From: Vitrella brassicaformis CCMP3155
Taxonomy: Eukaryota; Protista; Chromerida
Length of the DNA stretch: 64,000 nt
Assembly (NCBI GenBank): GCA_001179505.1
Contig: CDMY01000357.1
Location: 39,188-103,187, forward strand
Direction: 5' to 3'
Shown here: piece by piece, positions 9,539 to 64,000 of the stretch
Position numbering within the stretch: the first letter of the stretch is position 1
How the letters are laid out: every line of letters starts with the position of its first letter
Position numbers and translations under genes: made by a program
Notes under the pieces: generated by a model
Databases searched by the model: none
Seen by the model: only the letters and a program-made list of their open reading frames with translations
What the model was told of the DNA's origin: nothing

Positions 9539-12500
9539 TTACACTTTGCCTTCGTAGAGGTCCACCTCCCGAATGTCGATGTTGAGCGCCTTCTCCAGCT
9601 TCCGTATCACGAAGCGCGTGTCGGGAGTGACGAAGTTCATGACCACCCCAGGATTGCCCGCCCGGCCCACACGACCCGCCCGGTGGATGTAGTGCTCGGC
9701 GTCGGTGGGCAGGTCCAGGTTGACAACGTGACTCAGCCACGGCACGTCCAGCCCACGTGCACCCAGCTCTGTGGAGACGGCCATGCCGATCTGCCCGTTC
9801 TGCATCCGCTTGAACACCTCCGCACGGTCGTCCTTGGACGTGAAACCGGACAGCGGGGCCGCTGCAGCCAACAGAAGGCAGTCCAGTGCTGTTGTGGTTG
9901 GTTTGGTTGTGTTGGTGGTAGTGACTGACCGATGATCTGTTTCTGCAGGAGGTGGTCGACGAGCCACTTGACGCGGCCCTGCTTATTGCAGAAACACAGG
10001 ACGCGCTTGTCCACCGGATCTGAACACACACGCATACACACACCCACACAGACAGACACATACCTCGACACACAAACAACCTCCCTCGTGCTGTGCTGCG
10101 TGAATCCGCCCATCCATCCAGCCAGGTTTGGTAGGGTAGGTACCTGTGTGGAGGAATTTCCTGAGTGCCTCTGTGACTTTGTCTTCCCGCACACACATGA
10201 AGATGTGGTGTATGTTGGGGGGGATGAGGGGCACCCCTTCGTCGGAGTGCTTGACGCCACCAGGCCGGATCACGTGCCACACCGGACGCATGTACCTGAT
10301 GGATGGACGAGGGAGGGAGGGAGGCATCGATTCAACATCCATCCAACAAAACGTGTATGTACGCGACAAACGTCTGTAAGTTTCAACTGTCCATACGCAC
10401 CTTTTGGCGGCCTGTGTGACGCTCTTTTGAGCACCGGTGGCTGATGCGAAGATGGTTTGCCTATGTGTGGAGTGGGTGCCCTTGGGGATGGTCGCCATCA
10501 GACTTTCCAACTGGCCCTCATACGGATCCTGCATTCATAGACACACAAACCACTCAAACCATACATGCACGGGTGGAAAGAAACACGCCCTCTGCCCTGC
10601 CCACTTACTTACCCGTATGAGTTGGTCCACTTCGTCAAGCACGAGATACTTGACGCGGCTGAGGTCCACTTTCCGACGGTCCAGCACAAAGTCGTACAGC
10701 CGGCCTGGAGTTCCCACCACCACCTCGGGGCCGCCCTTGAGCTGCTCCAGCTGATACTTGGGGTTAGCACCGCCCAGCAGCATGGCGCACCGAAGACCAG
10801 TCCCTTCCAACACCACGCGACACACCTGACATGACAAACACACACATCAACCAGAGAGGAAGGGTGGGAATGACGAAAAGTACAGCCGTTCGTTCATCAA
10901 TGCACCCACCCTTTGTATGTTTCCTCTTACCTTGGCGATCTGCGCGACCAGTTCCCTCCCGGGCGCCACAATGAGGAGCTCGGGACCCCTCCTCCGCCCC
11001 TGCACACCTCCCCGATTGCCATTGATATCGGTGGCATTGGTGGCAGCCGTTGCCCCATGCTCATTCAGCATGCGCTCGAGCAGCGGCAGGAGGTATGCGA
11101 GTGTCTTGCCGGATCCCGTGTGTGCGTGTATGATGAGGTCGTCGCCCTGCAGAATGCGTGGGATGGCCTTGATCTGCGTGTGGGTGGGGTTGAGGATGCC
11201 GCCACGCCGCAGGTTCTCCACCATCATGGCGTTGCCGATGCCGATGTCCGGGTCGGTGAACCGCCGCTGCTTCTCGGGGTCGACGTAACCCAACTCGGCG
11301 AAGTCAAACACACCGTCGTAGCGGGAAATACGACTGCCCTTTTGTGGCGGCCGCGTGCTCGTCTCACGCTGGTCGGTCACCGTGGCATTCGTCCTGCTCT
11401 GCAACTCTTCAGTGGCTCGCAGGGCCGTCTGGACGAGGTCGTGGCTGGAGCTCTCCACCCCACCCAGGCCCTCATCTGACTGCAGGAAGGGCAGACCGGT
11501 GTCGTCAGAGTCAGCCACGTCAACATCACCACCTGCTTTCTGCAACAACAGATACAGGCAGGTAGGGAGGGAAAGTGTGCATGAGGTGGGCAGGCCGGGT
11601 ACTTGTGTGTGTGCGTGTGTAGGTACCTGCTGCCTCTTCTTCTTCTTCTTGGTCGCGAGAAAGCCGTGTTGTTTCTTCCACTCAATGATGCTGTCTGGGC
11701 GCTCCCTAGTGGACACTGGTGCATCAGGCGACGACCCAGCAATGGCAGCTGAGGCGACGGACAGAGGCCGGACAGACTCGGATGGCTGCTGCGGTGGCGC
11801 TGTTTTGGTGTGCCGTGACCGGTCGGGCGGCCGCAGTTTGAACGAGCGAGTGTCTTGGTCGGTGAGTCCGGTGGTGAGGTACTGGAGCATGGCCGAGCCC
11901 TTGGTCTGCTGGCCGTCCCCCACGTCATCCTCAGTGTCCCGATAGTACCGCCGGCCCCGCACTGCAGTAGGTGAGTCTGACCTGCCGCCCTGAAAAAACA
12001 CACAGATTGTTGAATAGGCAGGCAGCCATGAACGAATGAATGAGAGGGGCGGGATTGACATGTATGAGACTGGTCGCAGTTAGTTAAATACCCACCTGTG
12101 CGGCTCCCCCAACTCCAAACTTCTTGTCCAGCCGTTCCAGCATGCCATCCAAATCCAACCCACGCAACTGAGAAAAGGGCAACACACACAGAGTGATGGA
12201 TGCGCCATCCATCCATCCATCCATCCAGTCAGCCGCACCTGTGGGTCTTTGTCCATTTGTATGGATCCATCGGGTGCCTTGAAGCTCTGCACCCGCCGCC
12301 AGGCTGCCCTGTCCTCGTCGGTCTCCTCGTCCACATCATCCTCATCCTCACCGTCGTCGTCAGATGATGATGCTGCCGACACACCACCACCACTACCACC
12401 TGCACCACCACCGCCCCATCCCTTGTCCATCTCAAGCACGTCACCAAAGGGCTGCTGCCGACGGGAAACAGACGATAGGGCAAGGGGTCGGCGAACGGAG

Positions 12501-12859: not shown

Positions 12860-14613
12860 ATGGAGGCCAAGTCAGTGCCTTGTCAAGGTTTGCCCAGCAA
12901 GGGTGATGATGATCCGCCGCCGTCGAATCATCGACTGCTGGGGCCTCTCTTGTCCATCGGCGACACTGTGGTTCTCGAGAAAGGCGAGGAGCGAGGCCTG
13001 CCCATCCTCTCCCTGGCTTATTCCCTAGTGCTGGCCCGGGTCTGCGATGCAATGGTCAAGAGACTGCCACTCGAGGAAATCATGAAGACCATGATGCGGA
13101 ATATGTTCGGTGAGGGAGGGCAACGGTGTGTGTGCATGATTGAGTGAGTGACTCTGTACGTGTGTGCCTTTGAATTGTGTTTGTGGTTGGTTCAGGGTTC
13201 ATCATATGGGAGTTCAAGGATGAGGACACATCGCAAAAGCACGGCCATTCTGTGGTGCTTCACATCTTCCCAAGTATAGACACATGCATGAAGGCACATG
13301 CAGACGGGAGGGCGAAGGAGAGGCCATGACCTGTCCCTCGCTTGATTGCTTGTTTGCACGTCGTATGTTATGTGTGCCTTCAGAGATTGTGGATGGGTCG
13401 TTAGAGTATCCGCATTGCCACAAGAGAAACTGGTCAGTCAGTGCACATACTGTTTCCTCATTAATTCATTCATTCATTCATTCTTTGCCATTGGTTGGGT
13501 GTCCGGTGTGTCAGGTCCTCAATCAACATGCACGGCACATACCAGCACATCCTCTACAGCTTCCTCAAACACGACACCGGTAAGCCTCGCAGTGCGCCGT
13601 GCGATGCGTTGCACTGCAGGGTCGGTCATACTCATTGCGAACGTTACTCAGGCGAGGCCATCACGCCGGATCTGTCGCTGCCCGGCCACGCTGCTGAGTG
13701 TCCGCAGCAGAACCTGAAGCTCTTCGAGCACGAGATGGAGACGGGCTGCCATTTCAAAGGACCTGTGAGGGTCGACGCAGTGCAGGTAGGCCGGGGCGTG
13801 TCAACACGTACTCGAGACGGACGCCTGTGCGCCTTGTGTGTGGGGATGATCAGGAGTTCACCTACAAGAAGGGTGTGCTGCAGTATATGGACAAGCGTGT
13901 GCCGCATCGATTGGACAAATACGGTAGGGGGGGAATGGGCAATCGACGAGCCTCCGAGCCTGCCTCCGTATTATGGCTGGTTGTTTGTGTGTCTGCAGAG
14001 AACACGTTCAGTCTGAATGTTCGTGGCCCGCTGGACCCTACACTCAACACGCTATTTACCGTTCTCAACTACAAACCCCTCCCACAGGTGGTTGCCTCAT
14101 TCACTCCCAGGAAATCATCGCACTACACACATATACATGCATTCCATTCCCATCTCGTGTGTGGGCGGATGGGTGGGGCGGATGGGTGGGTGGATGGGTG
14201 CAGAATGCGGACAAGCAGTGGCAGGTGCCGCTGTCATCCCTAGAGCACGCCTCAGAGATCATCCGCCTTGTCACCGCAACACTCGCCGATCCCGATCTCT
14301 CTGCGTTCGCGGCGATGGGTGGCGATGCGGCCAAGCTGGCGTCTCTGCCGATCGACGAGGCGTTCCGCTATGCCGTGACGATCGTCAGCGGCTTCGAGGA
14401 CAGGTACGTGACCATTACAATCAAGGCGGCCGACACACACATGACATGACATGACATGACATGGTCTGTGTGGCTGTGTAGGTTCCCCCTTGTGATGCCT
14501 CTGGACAAGGGCGGTACGATGAAGGCTGGCGTGGTGACGGGTGAGGCCGTCAGGGGCCTCGTCTACCACAGCCTCAGGACCATGCCCGAGGTCCGAGTGC
14601 CGGAGCATGTGTA
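12860..14613 (+). CDS. Hypothetical protein, about 8 exons; start uncertain
   Basis: GT-AG exons join in frame: MEAKSVPCQGL...MRNMF|GFIIWEFKDEDTSQKHGHSVVLHIFP|KIVDGSLEYPHCHKRNW|SSINMHGTYQHILYSF...|EFTYKKGVLQYMDKRVPHRLDKY|ENTFSLNVRGPLDP...VRVPEHV*. Confidence 0.65.
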
Positions 14614-15064: not shown

Positions 15065-18679
<3,615 letters not shown>

Positions 18680-19554: not shown

Positions 19555-22130
19555 TTATTTAATAGCGCGGTAGACCTGCCGCGTGACAATATAAGGCGTG
19601 CTCTCAACCTTGTGGTACCTGCAGCCATCCATCCATCCATCCACACGACAGACAACCAACAACCAACGCTCTGGAGCGAGCTCTGCCAGTNNNNNNNNNN
19701 NNNNNNNNNNNNNNNNNNNNNNNNNNNNNNNNNNNNNNNNNNNNNNNNNNNNNNNNNNNNNNNNNNNNNNNNNNNNNNNNNNNNNNNNNNNNNNNNNNNN
19801 NNNNNNNNNNNNNNNNNNNNNNNNNNNNNNNNNNNNNNNNNNNNNNNNNNNNNNNNNNNNNNNNNNNNNNNNNNNNNNNNNNNNNNNNNNNNNNNNNNNN
19901 NNNNNNNNNNNNNNNNNNNNNNNNNNNNNNNNNNNNNNNNNNNNNNNNNNNNNNNNNNNNNNNNNNNNNNNNNNNNNNNNNNNNNNNNNNCCCCCCCCCC
20001 CCTCCCCATCCCGTCCCCCTGTTAACACACTTACGTACCATGCCATGGGCTGATCGCAGAATGGGCATTTGCGCCTGTCGGCGTGCACCTTCTTGGCGCA
20101 AATGTAGCAGATATCACCGTGGCCACACTCCATTATCACAGTGTCACACACACGATCGTTGCATACTGACACACACATAGCATACACACACACACACACA
20201 TCCAAAGAGCGGTATGTCTGTATGTGTTTGTGGACGTGTGTGTCTGTGTGTCTGTGTGCTGCTTAGTGTGTGTGTGGTGTGGTGTGAGGCCTCCCTCCCT
20301 CCCTCCCTCCCTGCTCACTGGGGCACTCTCCCGTTTGGCTGCCGGGCGTCACGTGTCCCGCCTCTGCGTGTGCCGTCGACTCGGCCAGCAGGGGGGTCTT
20401 CTCGGTCGCACTCAGCCGACTCACATCAGACGGCATCGCCACACCACCCTCCCCCCCAGCAGCTGCGGCAGCATGTTTGGACCCGGTGGCCTCCCCTTCA
20501 ACAGCCCCTGTGGTGGTGCTCGTGGTCGTGGTCGCGCGCAGAGACGTGAGTGCCCCCCCGATGCCCAGAAAGGAGAACACGCCCCCGCCGCCCTCCTGCG
20601 TCTTCTTGGCTGGCGCATCGCTTGGGACGATCTCCTTGAGAGGCCCGGTGTACCGCCTGTACACGGCCCGCCTCACTCGCTGCAGATACCGGGGTCTGCG
20701 GTAGCCGGGTGGAGGGCGCACGGGGGGTTTGTAGTAGGGGGACGCCTGCATGAACTGCCGCACGGACTCGACAAAGACGGCCGATGCGATGCCGGCCAAG
20801 AGGCATGTGATGAGTACTAGAGGGATGATGAGCCAGTGAGGGGTGAGGGGCGAGACGCTGTCCGGGCTGTCCAACCACCATGAGAAGTCCATGACCCAGT
20901 AGGCCAGCATCAGGATGGTTGGCACGGTGATGAGCACCACCAGAGCGGCGTTGAGGCGCCGTTCGGCCAGAGGGGTGTCGGGCTGGTTGGTCAACTCAGC
21001 GTAGGCGAACAGCATTCCCGTGATGAACATTGCACCTGCACACACACACACACACACACACACATCGACACGCATACGCACATTGAACGCTTTAACGGAA
21101 TGGAAGGGCCTTCACTGCTTTTGTGTCTGTGTGTGTCTGTGTCACTAACTCACTGACCGAGTAGAACCAGTAGCGGGGTGAATGCCGGCAGCCATGTCTG
21201 TGATAGATAGCCGTCGACTTTCAGTATGATCAGCAGCAGCTGGGTAAACGGCCAACTGCATCCATCCATCCATCCACACAAGAATGAGAGGGAGGCATTT
21301 CGTGTACATCGGCGGCCCGGCCGACATCCCTTCCTTCTTGATTCGCTTGATTGACTTACACGTGCAGTGCCTGCACAGTGTCGGGCACCCACATCCTGCA
21401 GGCATCAACGAACCAATGAATGCCACAACACACCATACCACACACAACTCTTCAACAGGCTGCCTCCCCTGGCCCACCAACGCACCCCCCCACCCACCAG
21501 CTGTAGTGTCTATCCATGACGTATGCGACGATTGCGTTGACGAGTCTGGCCATGGTGCAGGGCACTATGGCCATACTCAGTGTGTGCACCTGCACCCAGG
21601 CACTCGCCCCCAGGTACCAGCACCACACCAAACCGATGCTGCTGACGTCCAGCACCGTCTCGAGGGTCCGCAGGGCCACCAGTATGCGGTGGACCGACAC
21701 GAAGGATCCGCCCCACCTGCCCGCCAGCAGCTCGGTGATGCCGCACACCACCTTGCCGTCCAGCAGACGGGCCACCAACACTACCACCAAGTAGCCGTGC
21801 CACGGCCATTTCAACACCTTCAGCACCTTCAAATAGCAGAAGAACTGCATTGGTGCATGACATGACACACAGAGTGATGGAGGGAATTCATCCTGCATGT
21901 TGTTCACGATGCGATGGATGGCAAATGAATGATCGGCTTACGGATACAAGGAATGCAGCCACGGCCGCGATGCACTGTCTGGCGCTGCGTGAAAGGGTCT
22001 CCATGAGGGTCTCGTTGTACAGCCACTGCCCTTGCTGGGGGGCGGGCTGCAGCTGCGGTGCCTCCTGCTGCTGGCCATTGGCTTGTGGCGGTGGCTCGGC
22101 AATGTTGACGCCTGCTTCAGCAGCAGCCAT
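19555..22130 (-). CDS. Multi-pass membrane protein (TMEM185-like TM repeats) with C-terminal RING finger; putative membrane E3 ligase. Alternative in-frame ATG at 22160
   Basis: Hydrophobic helices with LKVLKVLKWPW and QLLLIILKVDGYLSQTWLPAFTPL (LK.D...W..F.PL pattern recalled for TMEM185-type repeats). Spliced RING: ECPICNDRVCDTVIMECGHGDICYICAKKVHADRRKCPFC. An assembly gap lies in the last intron. Confidence 0.75.
19691..19990. other. Assembly gap (300 N)
   Basis: Run of 300 N followed by a poly-C tract. Confidence 1.
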
Positions 22131-28888: not shown

Positions 28889-29364
28889 ATAGCCTTCAAT
28901 GCCAGCCAGGAGGGGAGAGAGACAGCCTCGGAGCTCTCCTCGCCCACAAATTGTTGGTTGAGAGGGCAAACAAGCAATGTCTTGCGACGCTCTGCATACT
29001 TGATGAATGCAGCCCTGAGTTCGTGTTAAACATATTAGTGGCCGGGCGGTCGACATGTCGTGGCTCCTGCGAGTCACTGAGCATACGCTGCATTCAGTCA
29101 GTCAGTCCATCGGCCACCCGTGTGTCGCCAGCATGTACGTACGTACGTACGCACAGCACACAACGCATACACACAGACCACACAGATTGATTCTCATGCG
29201 GTACAGAAGAAACAACCATTTGTGCCAGCCGCCCAGCCCAAGGCTACAGCCCATCCATTCATCAACCTCACCCTCACTCACACAACGAACGGCGAAAGTG
29301 GCATACCCATCAGTCAGTCCCACTCCCCTCGGCCTCCCCGCCCGTGTCTCATGTAATACAGCTA

Positions 29365-32300
29365 TCATGTGGTGGTGGTGGTTGTCTCGGGGCCGCCCTG
29401 GCCCTCTCGCTCCGCCTTGAGCTTGGCCAGCTCCTCCTACAGGAACGTACCACCCAGACACACAACGCACCGCACATATATACCGATTGAGTGTGTGCAT
29501 ACAAACTTGGCTTGAGGGGCATGGCATACGTACGTCGCAGGAGGAGACGAGGTTCTGCCAGCACCGTGTGTTGTCACGCGAGTTCGACACAAACTCCTGC
29601 ACACACAGACACTCACACGTGCAGTGCAGGCAGCCCCTGCCTGCCTCTCTCTCTCTCTGTATCACTGCCTGACTGCTTACGCACCCACTTACCTCGCATT
29701 TGGTGGAGTATCTGGCGATTTGTTCAAAGAATGGCAGCCACACGACGTTGATGAAGAATATCTGTGCCTTGGCCATGTTGGTGTTGTACCGGTCGAAGAT
29801 CGGCAGCGACACACCCAAACCCAGCGCCTGCTCTGCACACACACAGCACAGCAGACAGAGGACAGAACGAACAGCATGAGCGCATACCATACACATCGAT
29901 CGGTCCTTGACGGAATGAATCATCAATCGCTTGCCTTTGTCTCCCTGGTCCCAGAATTCGTTCATGCACATGCTGGCCCACTGGGTGGCCAGCTGCCACG
30001 GCTTGCCTGAAAAGCGATACATACAGACAGGGAGCGACACCACACCCGCCCAGCCACCAATGTAATGGCAAGACAGACAGATATGGATCAGATGAGGGTG
30101 TTCGGTTGGTTAGGCAGCCTGTCCTGCCTGGGTTAGAAATGTCGGCAGCGTGAAGTATGACGGAGAAGAACAGCTCACGGTCACTGGCATTGCCGCCAGC
30201 CTGCGGCATGAAATCTGCATATATATATGATATGCAGCCAGCAACAGTGTACATACCTATGATATGTGTGTGTTCATGCCATGCAATGCGTGTGTCTCTC
30301 TCTGTGTGCGTCTTGTCTTGGTCGCCTTGCCTTGTGCGTCTAGTCTCGACTTGAGATGGTTCTGAATCAACGTGTGCTTGGACATGTCAGCTGCACACAC
30401 ACACATACACAGACAGACAGCCACACGGGTGCCGTGTGTGTCTGCAGTGAGTGACTGTGTTTGTGGGTGGTCATATATGTCTTACTGTCCAGGACCATCC
30501 TCATCGCCAGACGCCGCAAATCACGGCGCCTGATCACAAACAGAGGCACAGACATGGCTGTGCTGTGCTGTGGTGTGCTGGGGCACTGCAAGCCTGTCTG
30601 TCTGTGTGTGTATGTCGGGGGCGGGGTGGGGCGTGTGTGATACTGAACTGTTCGTTGTCCCATTGCTGGAAGAGCCCCCCGTGCGGCAGGCTGAGCAGCA
30701 GCTCGAAGGCTGACGCCACGTGGTAGTTCTCCAGCACCGACTGATCTGCATGTATGGGCCACACACAGCACAGCACAGCAGAGCACAGTCAATCCCACCT
30801 AAAGCCATACATACAGTGGGTGTAAGTCAATCCCCTACCGTTGTATCTGATTGCGAGGGGGTGGTTGCTGTTGACTGCGAACTGGTTGTTGAACCCCGGG
30901 TGTCTGAAGTCGTGGATGGCCGCAGAAAACAAGATGGCGAACACCTCAAACGGACTCATCTCCACTTGCTGTCAGCCACACACACACAGAGACACACATA
31001 CATACACAGACAGACATACATACATAAGTGGGATGGCTGGGTGTGTGTGGGTGTGTGTGTGTGTGCGACCCTCCTGACTGACCTGTGCGAATTGTGCCTC
31101 AGTGAGCATCCAGAAAGATGTGTGGACCACATCGGCGGCGTGGATGTTGTTGTGGAACAACTTATTCCTGTCGTACCCTGCACACACAGAGAGAGACACA
31201 TGAGCGAGCGACCAAGGACACCCAGTCCGTCAGTCCTCAATGCATGGATGGATGCATCCATCGAATCCGCACCTCTCTCGATGTAGTGAAAGAACGCCAA
31301 CAGATCATCTGCTGGCAGGCGCAACTGACACACACACGCAGAGCACACAGCACACAGCACACAGCCCAGCCACGATTGATAGATAGGTGGTCGAGTGGCT
31401 GTCTCCGATTGATTCCCCCTAGGCCTGTCTGAGGCCTCCACACCAACCTGTTGTATGAGGTCGAGTTTGTTCATGAGTATCCAGCATATGTTGAGCAGCG
31501 GGTGCCCGCCGCACATGTCGCTGAACTTGAAAATGTCAAACGACATACTCCCACCACTCTCACCGAAGTACGACGCTGCCTGAACCCACCCAAGCATACC
31601 ACATATAACATTGCCCTCATTTGCTGCGTCCATCCGTACGTCCAACTAGCTATCTATCGTCACCTCACCTGGGCGCTCAGCAGTCCTCGGATTCTCTCCG
31701 CTTCCTGCCGAACGCTCGTATCGCGTGGAAACAGCAACGGCTCCAGCTCCCTGCAATGCAAATCCACCGCACACAAAGCATATACATACCACGCATAGAA
31801 AGTAATCGATCGCCAACCGACTTGGGCAAGGGTGCTGGGGATGGTTGCGACTCAGAGTCGTCCGCTTCGGGCCGGTCGCCCTGCTTCTTGTCCTTCGGCG
31901 GGCCTGCAGATCACCAGAGGATCGTCCAAGAACAGACCCTGCCCTGATCAAAGCTCACTCTTCTCTCTTATTACCGTCGCGGACACTGCATGAGAACGAA
32001 CACACAACCAGAGGGAAGGATGCCGAGTGAAGGAAGCATCAAGAGACGTGCCCGGCTGTGTCTCTCTGTGTGAGCATACGCGGGGCTTCTGGGAGGGAGT
32101 GCGTCGTGTGTGATTTGGCTGAGCCATGAGAAGAGCTCCCTCTCCTGGCTCAGCTCGGGGTTTCCCTGCAGCTCGCCCATGTACGAGAGGTCATCGATAT
32201 ACCAGTGCTGAGACGACAGCTGCTGAATCGCCTTCATGCACAGGCTCAAACGAGACTGAATCGCTGACAAAGAGAGAGATACACACACCACCAACCCAAC

Positions 32301-44253: not shown

Positions 44254-44553
44254 NNNNNNNNNNNNNNNNNNNNNNNNNNNNNNNNNNNNNNNNNNNNNNN
44301 NNNNNNNNNNNNNNNNNNNNNNNNNNNNNNNNNNNNNNNNNNNNNNNNNNNNNNNNNNNNNNNNNNNNNNNNNNNNNNNNNNNNNNNNNNNNNNNNNNNN
44401 NNNNNNNNNNNNNNNNNNNNNNNNNNNNNNNNNNNNNNNNNNNNNNNNNNNNNNNNNNNNNNNNNNNNNNNNNNNNNNNNNNNNNNNNNNNNNNNNNNNN
44501 NNNNNNNNNNNNNNNNNNNNNNNNNNNNNNNNNNNNNNNNNNNNNNNNNNNNN
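44254..44553. other. Assembly gap (300 N)
   Basis: Run of 300 N in intergenic sequence. Confidence 1.
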
Positions 44554-48711: not shown

Positions 48712-50074
48712 ATGTTAGGTGGTCAGCCGAACGGTACGGATCGTGACCCTCGTGTGCCACCACACCACCGCGGGCTGCGGGATGAGAATGAGGTTGAGTT
48801 TGAGGACGAGAGCGACGAGTACAGCAACAGCGAGGAGGTGACGCCCAGCAACAGCGGCAGCGGCAGCGATCTGGACGAGGAGGTGACCTGGATTGAGTGG
48901 TACTGCCGACTCAAAGGCAACGAGTTCTTCGTGGAGGTCGATGAGGAATACGTACAGGTGAGTGAGGTCAGCGAGGCAGGATGGCAGGGAGGGAGGCGTG
49001 GCGTGGCGGCCACACCACCGTCATACATATACAGCCACGTTGGTTGGCTGGCTGTATGGATGGATGGTATGGTGTGGTATGTGTGGATGTCTGTCTGTGT
49101 GTATGTGTGTGGATCAATAAATGTCAGGATGACTTCAACTTGACAGGTTTGAGCAGCCAGGTGCCGTATTTCGACCAGGCGCTCAACACGATTCTGGACG
49201 CCGAGGACGACACGAGTGCGCAGGAGCAGGACGCCGACATTATGGGGCGGGGCGGGGCGGGGGCCATCGAGGACCGGCAGGCCATCATCGAGAACAGCGC
49301 ACAGGTGCTCTACGGCCTCATACATGCCAGGTTCATCATCACCAGCAGGGGCATGCAGCTCATGCTACACAACTACCAGAAACAGGTCTTCGGCTACTGC
49401 CCAAACGTCGCCTGCGAGAACCAGGCCGTCCTCCCCATCGGCATGTGCGACACACCAAGGCATGCCGGCGCTAAAGTCTACTGCCCCAAATGCCAGGTAC
49501 GTGGGTCCTGGGAGGGGGACAACACGGCAGAGGGAGGAGGGGAAAGGGCACAGACAGACCTGTGTGTGTGTGTGTGTGTGTGTGTGACAGGAGTTGTACA
49601 ACCCCCGCGGCAATCGTCTGGGCATGCTGGATGGCGCCTACTTCGGCACGACGTTCCCCCACCTCTTCCTGCTCACCTACGAGAACCTCGTATGTAACCA
49701 CTCCACCTGACAGGGCAGTCAATGTGTCGGGATGTCATGTCTGTCTGTCTGTCTGTGTGTCAGGTCCCTCCTCGGCCACAGTGGTACGTGCCTCGCATCT
49801 ATGGGTTCAGAGTGTCCAAGACAGTCAAGGACAGGCTCAGGTGCGGTGGGGCGGGGCCAGGCAAAGGGAGGGAGGGAGGGAGGGAGGGAGGGGCCTGCTG
49901 GCTGCGACGACCCACGCCGGCCACGTGTGTGTATGGGCTGTGTGCAGGCAGCAGCAGCAGCAGCGGTACCCGGCAGGTGATGGTTCAGCCGCTGCGGGCG
50001 GCGGTGCTGCGGGCGGGGGCGGCAAGCAGATCGCCGGCCGTTTAGAGGATGAAGATCCGTCGTCATCCAGGTAG
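48712..50074 (+). CDS. CSNK2B: Casein kinase II regulatory beta subunit
   Basis: [24 protein letters not shown]|[20 protein letters not shown], zinc ribbon FGYCPNVAC...[30 protein letters not shown]. Confidence 0.96.
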
Positions 50075-58596: not shown

Positions 58597-58829
58597 GGTC
58601 CTCAAACCCGACTCCCGCCGCCAGTCGTGAAAACACAGTTAAGGGTTTGAAGGGTTACAGGGGGAGAGAGCTCTCCCCGATCTCTTGTCCCTTTTGTCCC
58701 TCCCTCCTTTTCTTGGCTTCCCTCCCTCCGCCATGCTGCTAATGTGAGCCTAAACCACAATCGGCCTGGAATCACTCATTGTCTTCTGTGGGTGTCATGA
58801 GCAGCTCAGGCTAAGAGGACGTGGACGAG

Positions 58830-61800
58830 ATGAGTGCTGTCGATAGCGACGTCTTCTTCTCACCGCGCGGTGGGTCGGCTGCCAGCGCACAAGCAATACA
58901 TGTGTGAGTGAGAGCGCACAAGCACACACTGCGTGGTGTGGTGTGTTTCTTAGGCGACGAGGTGAATGATTCCCGTCGCCCGATGAATGAACGACTGCTG
59001 GCTGTGTATGGTGACAAACCATGGCACCGTATGCTGCTGAAGCGGTCTCACACCATGGCTGACATAGTCTGTCAGACGTGGCTGGATCTCGAGGGCAGGC
59101 CCACCGCCCATGTGACGTACCGGCAGATGAAGCAGAGGGTCTTCGACTTGTCGGCATATTTTGTCAGTCACCTTGGGCTCCGTCGTGGGGACAGGGTCCT
59201 CCTCTGCTTCCCACCCGGTGAGTGAGGCAGTGACACACACAGACAGACAGACAGCACACACGGAGAAGAGAAGAGACCAGGACGGTCGACTGACCGACTC
59301 GCCTCGAAGGCATGGTTTGCTTGCTTGCTTGTGTGTGCGCAGGTGTCGACTTCATTATTGCATTCCTTTCTTGCATGGTTTCTGGCATAGTGGCTGTTCC
59401 GGTAAGGTCGCTGCGACGGCAACACTGCCATGCACACATATCAGGGCCCATAAGCAGACACACTGGGCGTGTAATGTTTCCAACAGGTATACCCTCCTGA
59501 CCCGCGTCGTTTGTCTATCGATGTTCCCCGTTTGTGCGAAATCGCTCACTCCTCACAAGCCACCTACACCCTCACCAACCAGTAAGTATCACACACGCTC
59601 TTCCACATGACTAGTCTATCTCTCCCTCATCGCGCGTGTCTGTCATCTGCCTGTGGTTGCCGTATCAGGATGTACAAGCGAGTGACCTTGCTGATCACCC
59701 TCCGTGCTCGGTCACTGGACAGTCGGTGGACCGCTCTGCAGTGGGTCAGCACTGACAATCTCACCAACGACGGCGCAAGTGAAGACTTCGTGCCACCAGC
59801 CATCCCTTTCGACTCAGTGGCGTTCTTACAGTTCACATCAGGTGAATGGGAGGGAGGGAGGGAGGGAGGTGCGAACGGACGGACAGGCACATGCGTGTGG
59901 CCTTGGCTCCTTCTGCTCTGCCTGTCTGTTGTAAGGTTCCACTGGCGATCCTAAGGGAGTGATGGTGACGCACGGCTGCTTGCTGCACAACATCCACGTG
60001 TGCGCAGCAGTCTTCGGCTTTAATACCTGTATCGATGCCCCCGACGCGCCCGACGAGAGCCTCACCCTACTGCCCCTGGAGTCATGGCCAGCATTCACCG
60101 AAAGGAGACATGCCCTCAGTCTCAAGACGCGAGGGCACAGACCGCGTACCTTCTCATGGTTGCCCGCGTACCATGACATGGGTAAGTACGGCCGACGTGC
60201 GTACACTGGCCTGCTCGCTCCATACATGTTGTGTCCGCACTGCAGGCCTTATCGGGTGTTCGCTCTGCCCAATGTTCTTCGGATGCGAGTCCTTCTTTGT
60301 CTCGCCTCTTGATTTCCTGAGACGGCCGAGCTTGTGGCTGGAATGCATGTCTCGCTACCACTGCAGCGCTACCGCCTCTCCTAATTTTGGCTTCGAGCTC
60401 GTCGTGAAGCAGCTCGACAGGCCTGAGATGAAGGAGATCTTCGACCAGCTCGACCTCAGCCACGTCTGCGGCTTTCTCTGCGGCGCAGAGCCAATAAGAG
60501 CCAGCACTGTCAACAAGTTTATCAAGAAATTTGAGCCAGCCGGTCTTCGTCGAAGTGCCTTCATCCCTGCATATGGCATGGTAGCATGCACAACACGAAA
60601 GGAGTCCCTCACGCACAGAGAGGCTTACCTTGCCTTTTTTGCCTTGTATAAGGCGGAGCACACGCTGCTCATAACGGGTCGCTGGGGGTATAGCTACGAC
60701 CCACTCATCGTCACGGTCGATGCAAACAAGCTGAGGACACAGGTCAACACACACACACACACACACACATACACCCTCCCACCCGCATACACACGGGCTG
60801 CCTGCCTGTTCCCCCGACCGTCCTGTCTGTTGCTTGTTTTGGTTGTGTTCTGTCACTCATGTCAGGGTGTGGTTGAGCTGGTGGATGGTGAGTGTCCCCC
60901 CTCGGTGACCCCGGCGGCGTTTGTCGGGTGCGGCTGCCCTCCCCCCATCTCGGGTGCTGACATACGAATCGTGGACCCTGAAACCCTCAGGGAGCTGCCT
61001 CCAGGCCGCATGGGTGAGATCTGGGTTCGAAGCGCAAGCACGGCCGCCGGGTACTTCAACTTACCCGAGAAGACCGAGGAGACCTTCCACGGCTGCTGTC
61101 GGTACCTCACCGGCGAGCTGTCGACGCCCAACTACCTCCGCACGGGCGACAGCGGATTCTTCCACCAGGGGGAGCTGTTCATCTCTGGCAGGATCAAAGA
61201 CATGCTCATCGTGCGCGGTCGAAACGTCTTCCCGTCGGACGTAAGCTCACATATCTGTCTATGGCTCGGCTCATGCAGGCATGCGTGGCTCGGTCTGTGT
61301 GCCGTTGACTCATATATCTCAGATCGAGGAGGTGATAGAGGATGTGCCTGGGGTGCGCAAGGGCTGCAGCGTCGCCTTCGCTTTGGATGTCGACGACACG
61401 GAGCAGCTGGCCCTGTGCGTCGAGCTCAAGCAGCCACAGGCGGCCAGCCTCCTCACCTGGCTCACTGGAGGCGGCCAAGAAGAACCCGACTATCACAGCA
61501 AGGCAAAAGAGATCGCAAAGGCTGTATCTGTTCGGATTGGCATCCCCGTCTATCGCATCTGGCTTGTCAAGCCGCGCAGCATTCTTAAGGTGAGTACGTG
61601 TGAAGACAGACAGAGGAGTGCACACGCTCCTGTCGGTCGTGTGTCGATGTACTACTCGTGTGTGTGTAGACGACCAGCGGAAAGGTGCGACGTTCGCTCA
61701 CACGTGGCGCCATCCTGGATGGCAAGCTTTCAGGCGTGCTGCACTCTGAGGTTCTCGACGGGGAAAGCGAGGCCTGCTCACGGGAGAGATTCCCGTCCTT

Positions 61801-64000
61801 TTCCACCCACCAGTCCTCCACAACAGCCAGCCCGTCCTCAAGCAAATCAAGCCTTTCGACAGCCAACACCCCTCTGTCGCTCACCCCTGCCAGGGACGCC
61901 ATCACGCAGGCACAGATCAAGACTGTGGAAGGAGCCATATTTGAGAGCGCGAGGACCGTCTTCGGCGTCACGGAAGGGCTTGACTTGCATGCACCCATAC
62001 AGGTAAAGCGATCGACACAGATGACACCTGTGCATCATGTGTTGACAAACGTATGTACGTATGTATGTGTTGCGACGCCAAATTGAACAATGCCTTGCAG
62101 GAATTGGGGGTGAGTAGTCTAAAGGCGGTGCAATTCGCTGAGGCGCTTTCGAAGGCACTCGGGCAGAACATCGACGTCACATTATTGTTCAGCTTTGAAA
62201 CACTCCAGCAAGGTGAGAAACGCTCACAGACGCATGACTGTCTTGTGCCTCAAGCGTACGCCCCTCTTTCTTGTCTCGTCTTGTGCCTGTTTCGTTTAGT
62301 GGTTGCCTTCCTTGTTCAGGAGATGAATGGCGGTGAGTCCCAGTGTGTCTCCCCAACACCCTCCACCGAAATGTCGGACAGGGCCGCGCAGGTCGCCATC
62401 GTTGGTGCAGCGTGCCGCCTGCCGGGAGGCATTTCATCCATGGCTCAGCTGTGGAATGCACTCAGCAGCGGCATGGACGGCATCGACGAGATCCCCCAGA
62501 CAAGATGGGACGTCGATCAGTTCTACGACAACAATCCAGAGGCGGATGGACGCATGTATGTGCGGCAGGGCGGCTTCATCAAGGATGCAGAGATGTTCGA
62601 CAACGGATTCTTCCGTGTGTCGGACGTGGAGGCCAAGTCCATGGACCCGCAGCAGCGCATCTTGCTCAAGGTGTGTTACGAGTCGCTCAACTCTTCTGGA
62701 CTCGACAAGAAGGCCCTCATGCAGAAGCCCGTCGGTGTCTTCGTCGGCTGCTGCTCATTCGAATGGTCGTCCATCCAGACCAAGCTGGGTGCTGGTGCCG
62801 TCAGCTCGTACACGGCCACCAGTGCAGCGCCGTCCATCCTCGCCAACCGCATCAGCTACATCCTCGGCATCCACGGCCCCTCCCTGACTGTTGATACGGC
62901 CTGCTCATCTTCCCTCGTCGCCATCGATTCGGCTTCCATGGCGCTCCGCAAGGACGCTGATGGCTGCAGGACCGCCGTGGCTGGAGGGATAAACATGATG
63001 CTCAGCCCACACACGACAATCGCCCTCTGCAAGGCCCACTTCATGGCACCAGACGCCAGATGCAAGACGTTCGACGCATCGGCCGACGGATACGTCCGCG
63101 GCGAGGGGGCGGGAGCGATCGTGCTGAAGCGCCTTGACGACGTGGTTGCTGAGAGCCGAAGCAATCAGGTGCTAGCGATGTTGCGGGGCGCGTCTGTCAA
63201 CCACGGTGGCCGTGCGGTTGCTCTGACAGCGCCCAGTGGCATCTCCCAGCAGAATGTGATAAAGGGAGCCCTGCGGAGTGCAGGGCTGAAGCCCAATGAC
63301 ATATGCTACATCGAGGCGCACGGCACCGGCACCGCCCTCGGGGATCCCATCGAGGTCGCGGCGCTCAAGGCCGTCTTCGCCAAGAGCCGTCGTGAGGTTG
63401 ATGGGTCACCACTGCCGATCGGAGCCATCAAGACCAACATTGGGCATCTGGAGGGAGCAGCAGGTAGGAATGATGGACGGCAACGGTCGTCATTCGCGTT
63501 CTTGACACTTGGTCTCTGATGCGCTTGTCTAATCTCTCAGGGATTGCAGGTGTGTTGAAGACCATCTGCTGCCTCCAGGTGCAGCGTGTGCCGTCCAACC
63601 TGCACCTGAGGACACTGAACCCTAACATCAACATTGAGAACTTCCCCGTCGTCTTCCCGTCTGGTGGTGATGGCTTCCAGCTCACTCCCAACAACGGCGG
63701 TGGGCTCGTGGCAGGCGTCAGCTCCTTCGGCTTCGGGGGCACCAACGCACACGTCATCCTCTCCCTAGTGTCCGTGCAACCTGATGGACAGGCGGCAAGA
63801 GGCAACGCAGTGCTGCAGGATGACGCCAGCCTCATGTGGGATCGTCGGAGCTTCCCGTGGACAACCAAGGGGCACTCATTGCTGGGGCCCGCCACATTTT
63901 CTGACCATCACCACTACGAGGCACGTTACGAGGCGACGTTTGAGCGTCGCGTCCGTCGGGACGTGTTGCGTATGCTGAAGGACCATGTGGTGTCTGGCGT
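58830..64000 (+). CDS. Type I PKS/FAS megasynthase, 5' part: FAAL - ACP - KS - DH (no AT); runs off the right edge
   Basis: FAAL: AFLQFTSG|STGDPKGV, SWLPAYHDMG|LIG, GAEPIR, PAYGM|AE, YLRTGD, GRIKDMLIVRGRN, TTSGK. ACP: ELGVSSL. KS: DPQQR, DTACSSS, EAHGTGT, KTNIGHLEGAA|G, SSFGFGGTNAHVIL. Then WDRRSFPW...HSLLG...LKDHVVSG (DH). Confidence 0.95.

What the first reader, a model, noticed from the sequence alone, without database searches (positions are those of the whole stretch)
58830..64000. AT-less type I PKS with a FAAL-ACP loading module: KS fused directly to DH
After the KS end (GTNAHVIL, about 63770) a single continuous exon gives only about 25 residues before WDRRSFPW...HSLLG...LKDHVVSG, which is a post-AT-linker remnant plus the start of a dehydratase domain. 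There is no room for an acyltransferase or a KS-AT linker (seen in sequence). The KS triad is intact: Cys 62902, His 63319, His 63445. The characterised apicomplexan megasynthases (Cryptosporidium CpFAS1/CpPKS1, Toxoplasma PKSs) share the FAAL-ACP start but have cis-AT modules, whereas AT-less modules are reported for algal and dinoflagellate PKSs. Inference: a fatty-acyl-primed trans-AT assembly line making an unknown lipid-polyketide hybrid, which needs a stand-alone AT encoded elsewhere.
Basis: partly seen in the sequence, partly recalled or inferred. Interest (0 to 1): 0.85.

Follow-up and report, generated by a model that had tools for sequence, protein, structure and literature searches.

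The report
Algal polyketide synthase gene missing its acyltransferase
This is the front end of a large lipid/polyketide synthase gene, probably from the alga Vitrella brassicaformis, whose first module has cleanly lost its acyltransferase while a sister copy of the gene keeps it; the loss is real, but such acyltransferase-poor synthases are already catalogued in these algae.

Summary
Window 58,983-64,000 (+) holds at least 13 exons that encode FAAL-ACP-KS, and all are open.

After GTNAHVIL, about 25 residues in the same open exon lead to WDRRSFPW...HSLLG...LKDHVVSG. Contigs from two DNA runs span this junction at single-copy depth.

The closest relative is a paralogous gene in the Vitrella brassicaformis CCMP3155 assembly. 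Its KS is 80% identical in protein, its introns sit at the same places, and dN/dS against the window gene is about 0.2. That paralogue carries the KS end, an intact AT, the post-AT linker and the DH start in one 564-codon exon. The window copy lacks about 350 of those codons, in frame.

The KS is sister to the AT-bearing paralogue, inside the chromerid/apicomplexan first-module clade and far from bacterial trans-AT KSs. The same compact junction occurs in Chromera, another Vitrella gene and Chrysoparadoxa.

AT-less modules in chromerids and algae are published (PMC7464705, PMC4661987). This scan had already reported the same thing on other DNA of this genome. This is a new member of a known kind.

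The need for a stand-alone AT is not shown. I could not obtain the sequence beyond 64,000.

The parts
58983..61750 (+). FAAL-type adenylation domain on exons 1-10. Exons: 58983-59217, 59343-59401, 59487-59581, 59669-59841, 59936-60181, 60246-60580, 60653-60742, 60866-61240, 61323-61589, 61670 onward. The start codon at 58983 is a guess.
   Evidence: Pfam AMP-binding on several exons. The best NCBIfam matches are fatty-acid--AMP ligase families, below cut-off because only pieces were given. Splice sites were chosen by GT/AG, open frame and best fit to P0057 and P0273. The A3 motif FLQFTSG|STGDPKG is rebuilt across intron 59842-59935.
61900..62212 (+). Acyl carrier protein domain, on the end of exon 10 (to 62002) and exon 11 (62101-62212). 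The LGVSSL motif is at 62104-62121 and the likely phosphopantetheine serine is at 62116-62118.
   Evidence: Pfam PP-binding. Introns 62003-62100 and 62213-62299 are supported by the paralogue's protein (...HAPIQELGVSSIKAV...).
62362..63463 (+). Ketosynthase, main part (within exon 12, 62300-63463). Cys at 62902, His at 63319, His at 63445.
   Evidence: Pfam ketoacyl-synt 9e-83 and Ketoacyl-synt_C 1.9e-32. Codons checked. 80% protein identity to the paralogue's KS.
63464..63540 (+). Intron of 77 bases (GT..AG) inside the KS C-terminal part.
   Evidence: Read from the sequence. It is the best-scoring junction and the paralogue has an intron at the same place.
63541..63761 (+). End of the KS (exon 13), finishing with GTNAHVIL.
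   Evidence: 77% identical to the paralogue up to 63764.
63762..63836 (+). Residual linker of 25 residues, at the place where the paralogue has about 375 residues (the short KS-AT linker plus a whole AT).
   Evidence: Protein alignment with the paralogue's single exon L065:16956-18647. DNA identity stops at 63764.
63837..63872 (+). Post-AT-linker remnant (WDRRSFPWTTKG).
   Evidence: It aligns with MKWDHQVYDW of the paralogue, which follows that gene's AT. It also aligns with FDRKFFPW...HPLLG after the AT of T. gondii module 2 and with W.R.FPW in AT-less Chromera modules.
63873..63998 (+). Start of a dehydratase domain (HSLLG ... FERRVRRDVLRMLKDHVVSG), cut by the window end.
   Evidence: 16 of the last 20 residues match the paralogue's FERRLSRDVLRMLSDHVVNG. 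That sequence continues TIIVPGA and lies in a Pfam PKS_DH_N match. The window piece alone gives no Pfam hit.

Best explanation
This is the 5' part of an intact, selectively constrained gene for a fatty-acyl-primed reducing type I synthase of the chromerid/apicomplexan kind. It is very probably from Vitrella brassicaformis.

It arose by duplication of a gene whose sister copy reads FAAL-ACP-KS-AT-DH-KR-ACP-KS-ACP-R. After the duplication, an in-frame deletion of about 1 kb inside one exon removed the whole AT and the short KS-AT linker. The KS is now joined to the post-AT linker and the DH. These steps are shown here.

The working mechanism is inferred. The FAAL adenylates a fatty acid and loads it on the first ACP. 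The KS, with its Cys-His-His intact, takes the chain and condenses it with malonyl-ACP. The DH, and probably a KR, then process the product. The module's ACP has to be malonylated by an AT outside the module. The likeliest source is an AT domain of another module or of a sister synthase such as the AT-bearing paralogue. A dedicated free-standing AT seems less likely.
For: Domains and catalytic residues are confirmed. The gene has at least 13 open exons with GT/AG sites. It is collinear with the paralogue locus L065 over 58980-63797, with introns at matching places. dN/dS against the paralogue is 0.17-0.28 and dS is 0.5-1.7, block by block (NG86).

The paralogue's exon L065:16956-18647 holds the KS end, then Acyl_transf_1 (8e-45) with GQGSQ and GHSLGE, then PKS_DH_N. 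The window lacks about 350 of those residues. Reads support both forms as separate loci.

In the KS tree the window KS is sister to the paralogue (SH-aLRT 100). Both lie in a first-module clade of 9 sequences (100) inside a clade of 38 sequences, all from eukaryotes where the source is named (98). That clade is separate from the bacterial trans-AT clade.

First-module ATs look dispensable in this family. They have lost the active-site serine in the T. gondii, Chromera Cvel_3424 and Cardiosporidium proteins, while later ATs in T. gondii and Cvel_3424 keep it. Cvel_19857, CEM36439 and the Chrysoparadoxa protein combine AT-less KS-DH modules with one AT-bearing module.
Against: The DH and everything after it lie beyond the window, and I could not fetch them. 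The rest of the architecture is therefore unknown, including whether any AT is present. No RNA run was found that holds this stretch, so expression and splicing are unconfirmed. dN/dS is averaged over both copies, so a recent loss of function would not show. If the downstream part mirrors the paralogue (KS-ACP-R, no AT), the protein has no AT at all, and loading by a foreign AT domain has no direct support.
Confidence: 0.72

Rival explanations
1. This is a true trans-AT system. A dedicated free-standing acyltransferase gene elsewhere in the genome malonylates all ACPs of this synthase, as in bacterial and chlorophyte trans-AT PKSs.
For: There is no AT in the module. If the downstream part resembles the paralogue's KS-ACP-R module, there is no AT in the protein at all. 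Shelest et al. 2015 infer free-standing ATs for most algal multimodular PKSs (PMC4661987). Tomcala et al. 2020 count 29 genes with AT domains in varied arrangements (PMC7464705).
Against: No such gene lies in the 59 kb upstream. The only stand-alone AT named in PMC7464705 (Vbra_21812) is predicted to be plastid-located. The KS is not of the trans-AT clade, and the long stretch after the KS seen in bacterial trans-AT modules is absent. Relatives keep one integrated AT per protein.
Confidence: 0.15
2. This is a decaying duplicate. The AT deletion disabled the synthase, and the gene is on its way to becoming a pseudogene.
For: An essential domain has been lost while the sister copy keeps it. There is no RNA evidence.
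Against: All 13 exons seen are open with conserved splice sites. The KS triad, the ACP serine and the adenylation A3 motif are intact. dN/dS is about 0.2. The deletion is in frame and ends exactly at the post-AT linker. The same layout is kept in Chromera, another Vitrella gene and Chrysoparadoxa.
Confidence: 0.1
3. This is an assembly artefact. An AT-coding segment was collapsed out of the assembly between 63764 and 63837.
For: The KS region is repetitive in this genome. Contigs break inside it and depth peaks at 63324-63497. The paralogue's locus does contain an assembly gap with duplicated flanks.
Against: An exact 226-base contig spans 63731-63956 in two runs under two organism labels, at single-copy depth. 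The AT-bearing continuation seen in the reads is the paralogue's own sequence.
Confidence: 0.03

Closest known systems
Vitrella brassicaformis CCMP3155 paralogue: CEL96742.1 (1204 aa) plus the adjacent 3268-aa model on CDMY01000244.1. From the matching lengths 1204, 3268 and 330 aa, these are probably Vbra_12047, Vbra_12045 and the elongase Vbra_12050 of PMC7464705.
   Same: It has the same FAAL-ACP-KS start and introns at matching places. Its KS is 80% identical in protein and 83% in DNA. Its post-AT linker and DH start are homologous to the window's.
   Different: It keeps an intact AT (GQGSQ, GHSLGE) between the KS and the DH, in the same exon. It lies next to a Patched-type transporter and an ELO elongase, which the window locus does not.
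AT-less KS-DH modules of other chromerid and algal synthases: Chromera Cvel_19857 (two modules), Cvel_6161, Vitrella CEM36439.1, Chrysoparadoxa australica CAM9593565.1
   Same: The junction is compact: 31-46 residues from the KS end to HPLLG, including a W.R.FPW-type motif. Pfam PKS_DH_N or PS-DH follows and there is no AT.
   Different: These KSs are only 45-55% identical to the window's. They sit in other branches of the KS tree beside AT-bearing sisters, so the losses look independent. None has been characterised.
Bacterial trans-AT polyketide synthases
   Same: The modules lack an integrated AT, and the KS is followed by a DH.
   Different: Their KSs form a separate clade. In them, 150-200 residues separate the KS end from the DH start (88 cases in my set), against 40 here. 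A discrete AT gene defines that family and was not found here.
Apicomplexan FAAL-primed type I synthases (T. gondii 'type I fatty acid synthase', Cardiosporidium, Cryptosporidium CpFAS1-type)
   Same: They have the same FAAL-ACP start and belong to the same first-module KS clade, at 55-58% identity.
   Different: They keep the AT fold in module 1 (Pfam Acyl_transf_1). In the T. gondii and Cardiosporidium proteins examined, its catalytic serine is replaced by glycine. CpFAS1 itself was not examined here.
Algal multimodular AT-less type I PKSs (Shelest et al. 2015, PMC4661987)
   Same: These are eukaryotic multimodular synthases that lack integrated ATs. The authors propose evolution by duplication and AT displacement.
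   Different: That survey does not mention Chromera and gives no pair of paralogues with and without the AT. The window and its paralogue form such a pair.

Membership tests
Chromerid/apicomplexan FAAL-primed type I FAS/PKS megasynthases | N-terminal fatty-acyl-AMP-ligase-type adenylation domain followed by an ACP | tested here: met
   Pfam AMP-binding and PP-binding. The best NCBIfam matches are FAAL families. The A3 motif and the ACP serine are present.
Chromerid/apicomplexan FAAL-primed type I FAS/PKS megasynthases | KS with the Cys-His-His triad | tested here: met
   Codons at 62902, 63319 and 63445. Pfam match at 9e-83.
Chromerid/apicomplexan FAAL-primed type I FAS/PKS megasynthases | KS groups with first-module KSs of this clade | tested here: met
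   The KS lies in a clade of 9 sequences with SH-aLRT 100, together with Vitrella, Chromera, T. gondii and Cardiosporidium first-module KSs (quick tree, LG+G4).
cis-AT module | Integrated AT domain between the KS and the DH | tested here: not met
   Only about 40 residues lie between the KS end and the DH start. No AT-like sequence occurs in the window.
Bacterial-type trans-AT PKS | KS belongs to the trans-AT KS clade | tested here: not met
   The trans-AT KSs of five bacterial proteins form a separate clade of 30 sequences (97). The window KS lies in a separate clade of 38 sequences, all eukaryotic where the source is named.
Bacterial-type trans-AT PKS | KS followed by a stretch of about 100-200 residues before the next domain | tested here: not met
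   The distance from the KS end to the DH start is 150-200 residues in 88 bacterial cases and 40 here.
Bacterial-type trans-AT PKS | Discrete AT protein encoded with, or expressed with, the synthase | tested here: inconclusive
   None lies in the 59 kb upstream. The downstream sequence and the rest of the genome could not be searched.
PKS dehydratase (double hot-dog) | HPLL-type start and the HxxxGxxxxP active-site motif, with a profile match | tested here: inconclusive
   HSLLG and DHVVSG are present, but the window ends before the proline. There is no Pfam hit on the 42-residue piece. Homologous positions in the paralogue and four other proteins do reach PKS_DH_N.

The most novel reading that the evidence does not exclude
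The synthase has no AT in any module, and its ACPs are malonylated by the AT domain of the sister synthase that kept it. That would make two paralogous eukaryotic megasynthases share one integrated AT. The pair would then be a caught-in-the-act stage of the 'AT displacement' route proposed for algal PKS evolution.
Probability: 0.2. Interest if true: 0.5.

Novelty: new member of a known kind. Interest (0 to 1): 0.3.

Why it matters
The absence of the AT is expected for chromerid and algal synthases. What this locus adds is a clean natural experiment. Two paralogues share the same exon structure. One keeps the KS end, AT and DH start in a single exon. The other has the AT excised in frame, exactly from the KS end to the post-AT linker, and both remain under purifying selection.

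The pair shows how an AT-less module can arise from a cis-AT one in a eukaryote. It also marks natural boundaries at which an AT can be removed. Both copies can be tested: does the paralogue's AT load the orphan ACP? The product and its role in the cell are unknown.

Tried and rejected
1. I could not find the window's own annotated protein, which I wanted in order to fetch downstream DNA.
- The representative search with the junction piece did not return it.
- Three homologue searches failed: P0057 for lengths 662-2107 aa, P0147 region 1-1460 for 2474-7871 aa, where multi-KS bacterial proteins filled the list, and the KS exon for 268-854 aa.
- An exact look-up of the 488-aa ORF found nothing.
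2. The metagenome scan with the junction peptide matched only generic FGFGGTNA sites in other organisms.
3. Pfam on the last 52 or 84 residues gave no DH hit because the piece is too short.
4. I looked for scan notes on the same scaffold downstream; none was returned.
5. I checked whether the paralogue's neighbours (Patched, ELO) also lie in the window; they do not.
6. My first motif rule mislabelled dead-AT modules as AT-less. This was corrected with Pfam and an alignment.
7. I rejected three readings: an assembly collapse, membership of the bacterial trans-AT family, and an AT displaced to a nearby gene upstream.
Full report
**What is in the window**

The region is eukaryotic, with about 58% G+C and short GT..AG introns. 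On the + strand from about 58,983 to the window end lies a gene of at least 13 exons.

Pfam finds AMP-binding on several exons, PP-binding, and both halves of a ketosynthase (ketoacyl-synt 9e-83, Ketoacyl-synt_C 1.9e-32). The adenylation exons match NCBIfam fatty-acid--AMP ligase families best.

I fixed the splice sites by three criteria: GT/AG ends, an open frame, and best fit to two relatives. The resulting exons are:
- 58983-59217
- 59343-59401
- 59487-59581
- 59669-59841
- 59936-60181
- 60246-60580
- 60653-60742
- 60866-61240
- 61323-61589
- 61670-62002
- 62101-62212
- 62300-63463
- 63541 to beyond 64000

All are open. The adenylation motif FLQFTSG|STGDPKG and the ACP motif LGVSSL are intact.

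TGC at 62902 lies in DTACSSS, CAC at 63319 in EAHGTGT, and CAT at 63445 in NIGHLE.

After the intron at 63464-63540, one open frame runs from the KS end to the window end. GTNAHVIL is at 63738-63761. After 25 residues come WDRRSFPW (63837), HSLLG (63873) and LKDHVVSG (63975-63998). There is no room for an AT. A tblastn search with a related AT finds nothing in the 64 kb.

The 42-residue DH piece is too short for a Pfam hit. The DH assignment therefore rests on homology, described below.

**Assembly check**

Contigs of four public runs were laid on 58,800-64,000. All behave as DNA, because the introns are covered. An exact 226-base contig spans 63731-63956 in X1 and X3, at depths of 21 and 14.5, equal to the local single-copy depth.

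A contig in X3 leaves the window at 63764 with TCGCCATTCGACGCCCCCGA. That string sits right after the KS end of the paralogue described next, at L065 13914 and 17184. The reads therefore show both forms as separate loci. No RNA run holding this stretch was found.

**The closest relative and the deletion**

The representative search with the junction piece returned P0057, which is 77% identical over the KS end. P0057 is CEL96742.1 of Vitrella brassicaformis CCMP3155. Its locus L065 (CDMY01000244.1) is collinear with the window from L065 8914 / window 58980 to L065 13946 / window 63797. The coding blocks keep their order and near-constant offsets, which means the introns sit at matching places.

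The KS exon is 83% identical in DNA and 80% in protein to the paralogue's. dN/dS is 0.17-0.28 and dS is 0.5-1.7 over five blocks. This is an old duplication, and both copies are constrained on average.

In L065 a 300-N gap with 865-base duplicated flanks (98.5% identical) splits the paralogue into two gene models. Read through, one 564-codon exon (L065:16956-18647) holds four things in order: the KS end, Acyl_transf_1 (8e-45), the post-AT linker, and PKS_DH_N. The AT keeps its GQGSQ and GHSLGE motifs.

Aligned to that exon, the window matches up to NAHVILS. It then lacks about 350 residues and resumes at MKWD / LMWD. The end is nearly the same in both: FERRLSRDVLRMLSDHVVNG in the paralogue and FERRVRRDVLRMLKDHVVSG in the window. 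After this stretch the paralogue reads TIIVPGA, which completes the dehydratase motif.

The window gene is therefore the paralogue's layout with the AT and the short KS-AT linker removed in frame.

Further along, the paralogue reads DH-KR-ACP-KS-ACP-R, ending in NAD_binding_4. Its second module also has no AT.

**Is this layout known elsewhere?**

KS ends followed within 31-46 residues by a W.R.FPW-type motif and HPLLG occur in several proteins, each with PKS_DH_N or PS-DH directly after:
- Chromera Cvel_19857 (twice)
- Chromera Cvel_6161
- Vitrella CEM36439.1
- a Chrysoparadoxa australica protein

Across the 499 proteins fetched, the distance from KS end to DH start falls into three classes. 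Under 50 residues there are six cases, in these eukaryotic proteins and one unnamed assembly. At 150-200 residues there are 88 cases, the bacterial trans-AT type. At about 350-500 residues are the cis-AT modules.

**Phylogeny**

I built a tree of 84 KS domains (IQ-TREE quick search, LG+G4, SH-aLRT support only). The window KS is sister to the AT-bearing paralogue (100). Both lie in a clade of nine first-module KSs from Vitrella, Chromera, T. gondii, Cardiosporidium and one unnamed assembly (100). That clade lies in a clade of 38 sequences, all from eukaryotes where the source is named (98).

The trans-AT KSs of five bacterial proteins form a separate clade (97). AT-less and AT-bearing modules are interleaved. 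For example, CEM36439 KS1 (no AT) is sister to its KS2 (AT), and the two AT-less KSs of Cvel_19857 are sister to its AT-bearing KS. AT loss therefore happened several times within a cis-AT lineage.

**How it probably works**

Three things are shown. The domain order is FAAL-ACP-KS-DH. The catalytic residues are intact. The AT has been lost relative to a sister gene.

The rest is inferred. The FAAL loads a fatty acyl chain on the first ACP. The KS extends it with malonyl-ACP. The DH, and probably a KR, then act on the product.

The module's ACP needs an outside AT. In this family a first-module AT seems dispensable. The T. gondii, Cvel_3424 and Cardiosporidium proteins keep the AT fold in module 1. 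In those ATs, however, glycine replaces the active-site serine (GVGLGE, GHGVGE, GVGVGE). Later ATs in T. gondii and Cvel_3424 keep GHSLGE.

Proteins with a compact KS-DH junction whose later modules could be read keep one AT-bearing module elsewhere. Loading by an AT domain of another module or of a sister synthase is thus the most economical reading. A dedicated free-standing AT remains possible. I could not decide between these because the sequence after 64,000 was out of reach.

**Comparison with the literature**

Tomcala et al. 2020 (PMC7464705) list the chromerid KS-bearing proteins. Among them are models of 1204 and 3268 aa and a 330-aa elongase, which match the paralogue's locus. [quoted passage not shown]

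Shelest et al. 2015 (PMC4661987) report that almost all multimodular algal PKSs lack integrated ATs, and they propose AT displacement as the route.

Two follow-up reports of this scan reached the same verdict on other genes of this genome. The finding is real, but it is a new member of a known kind. What it adds is a paralogue pair with and without the AT, together with the exact limits of the excision.

**Limits**
- The organism is inferred from the paralogue's record and from earlier scan notes.
- The tree is a quick one.
- dN/dS is pairwise.
- Expression is untested.
- The downstream architecture is unknown.

Noticed in passing
L065:13566-17700 (V. brassicaformis CDMY01000244.1, reversed): A 300-N gap (16536-16835) lies between two 865-base copies (13566-14429 and 16836-17700) that are 98.5% identical. 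It splits one FAAL-ACP-KS-AT-DH-KR-ACP-KS-ACP-R gene into the models CEL96742.1 (1204 aa) and a 3268-aa protein. A 204-aa minus-strand model lies between them, and a 178-aa AMP-binding model lies upstream.
   Followed up: yes
P0346:1350-1690, P0273:1285-1600, P0360:1260-1580: The first-module AT domains of the T. gondii 'type I fatty acid synthase', Chromera Cvel_3424 and a Cardiosporidium synthase keep the AT fold. In all three, glycine replaces the active-site serine (GVGLGE, GHGVGE, GVGVGE). In the T. gondii and Cardiosporidium ATs the GQGSQ motif is also changed beyond recognition. Later ATs in the T. gondii and Cvel_3424 proteins are intact.
   Followed up: partly
L065:21480-24367: The paralogue's second module is KS-ACP-thioester reductase (NAD_binding_4), with no AT, DH or KR. 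One AT therefore already serves two KSs in that gene.
   Followed up: partly
L065:1-8005: The paralogue sits beside a Patched/sterol-sensing transporter gene (minus strand) and an ELO elongase gene. The window locus has no counterpart of either.
   Followed up: partly
window 58800-64000, runs X10-X15: Marine sediment metagenomes from 2023-2025 hold this stretch. X10 covers 44% of the sampled words, with 11 base differences listed over the pieces laid. This organism or a very close relative therefore occurs in marine sediment. The junction itself is not covered there.
   Followed up: no
window 63324-63497: Contig depth rises about six-fold here (154 against about 23 in X1), and contigs break at 63428-63461. 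This KS C-terminal stretch is shared with many paralogous KS genes of the genome.
   Followed up: no
window 16604-17548 (+), 10850-12079 (-), 29105-30109 (-), 48966-49694 (+): Other genes in the window, by Pfam on open segments: a thiolase, a DEAD-box helicase, a cyclic-nucleotide phosphodiesterase and a casein kinase II beta subunit. None is linked to the synthase in any obvious way.
   Followed up: no
window 19691-19990 and 44254-44553: There are two assembly gaps of 300 N each.
   Followed up: no
window 60743-60865: The intron between exons 7 and 8 carries a (CA)n microsatellite and stays in frame with its flanking exons. A raw ORF therefore reads through it as THTHTHT. Contigs of all runs break there.
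   Followed up: no
P0326:4055-4090: An unnamed 5327-aa hybrid from a Logan assembly has AMP-binding, condensation, KS and thioesterase families. It has the same compact KS-to-DH junction (RFSRRFLPWRRLPHPLL). Its organism is unknown.
   Followed up: no
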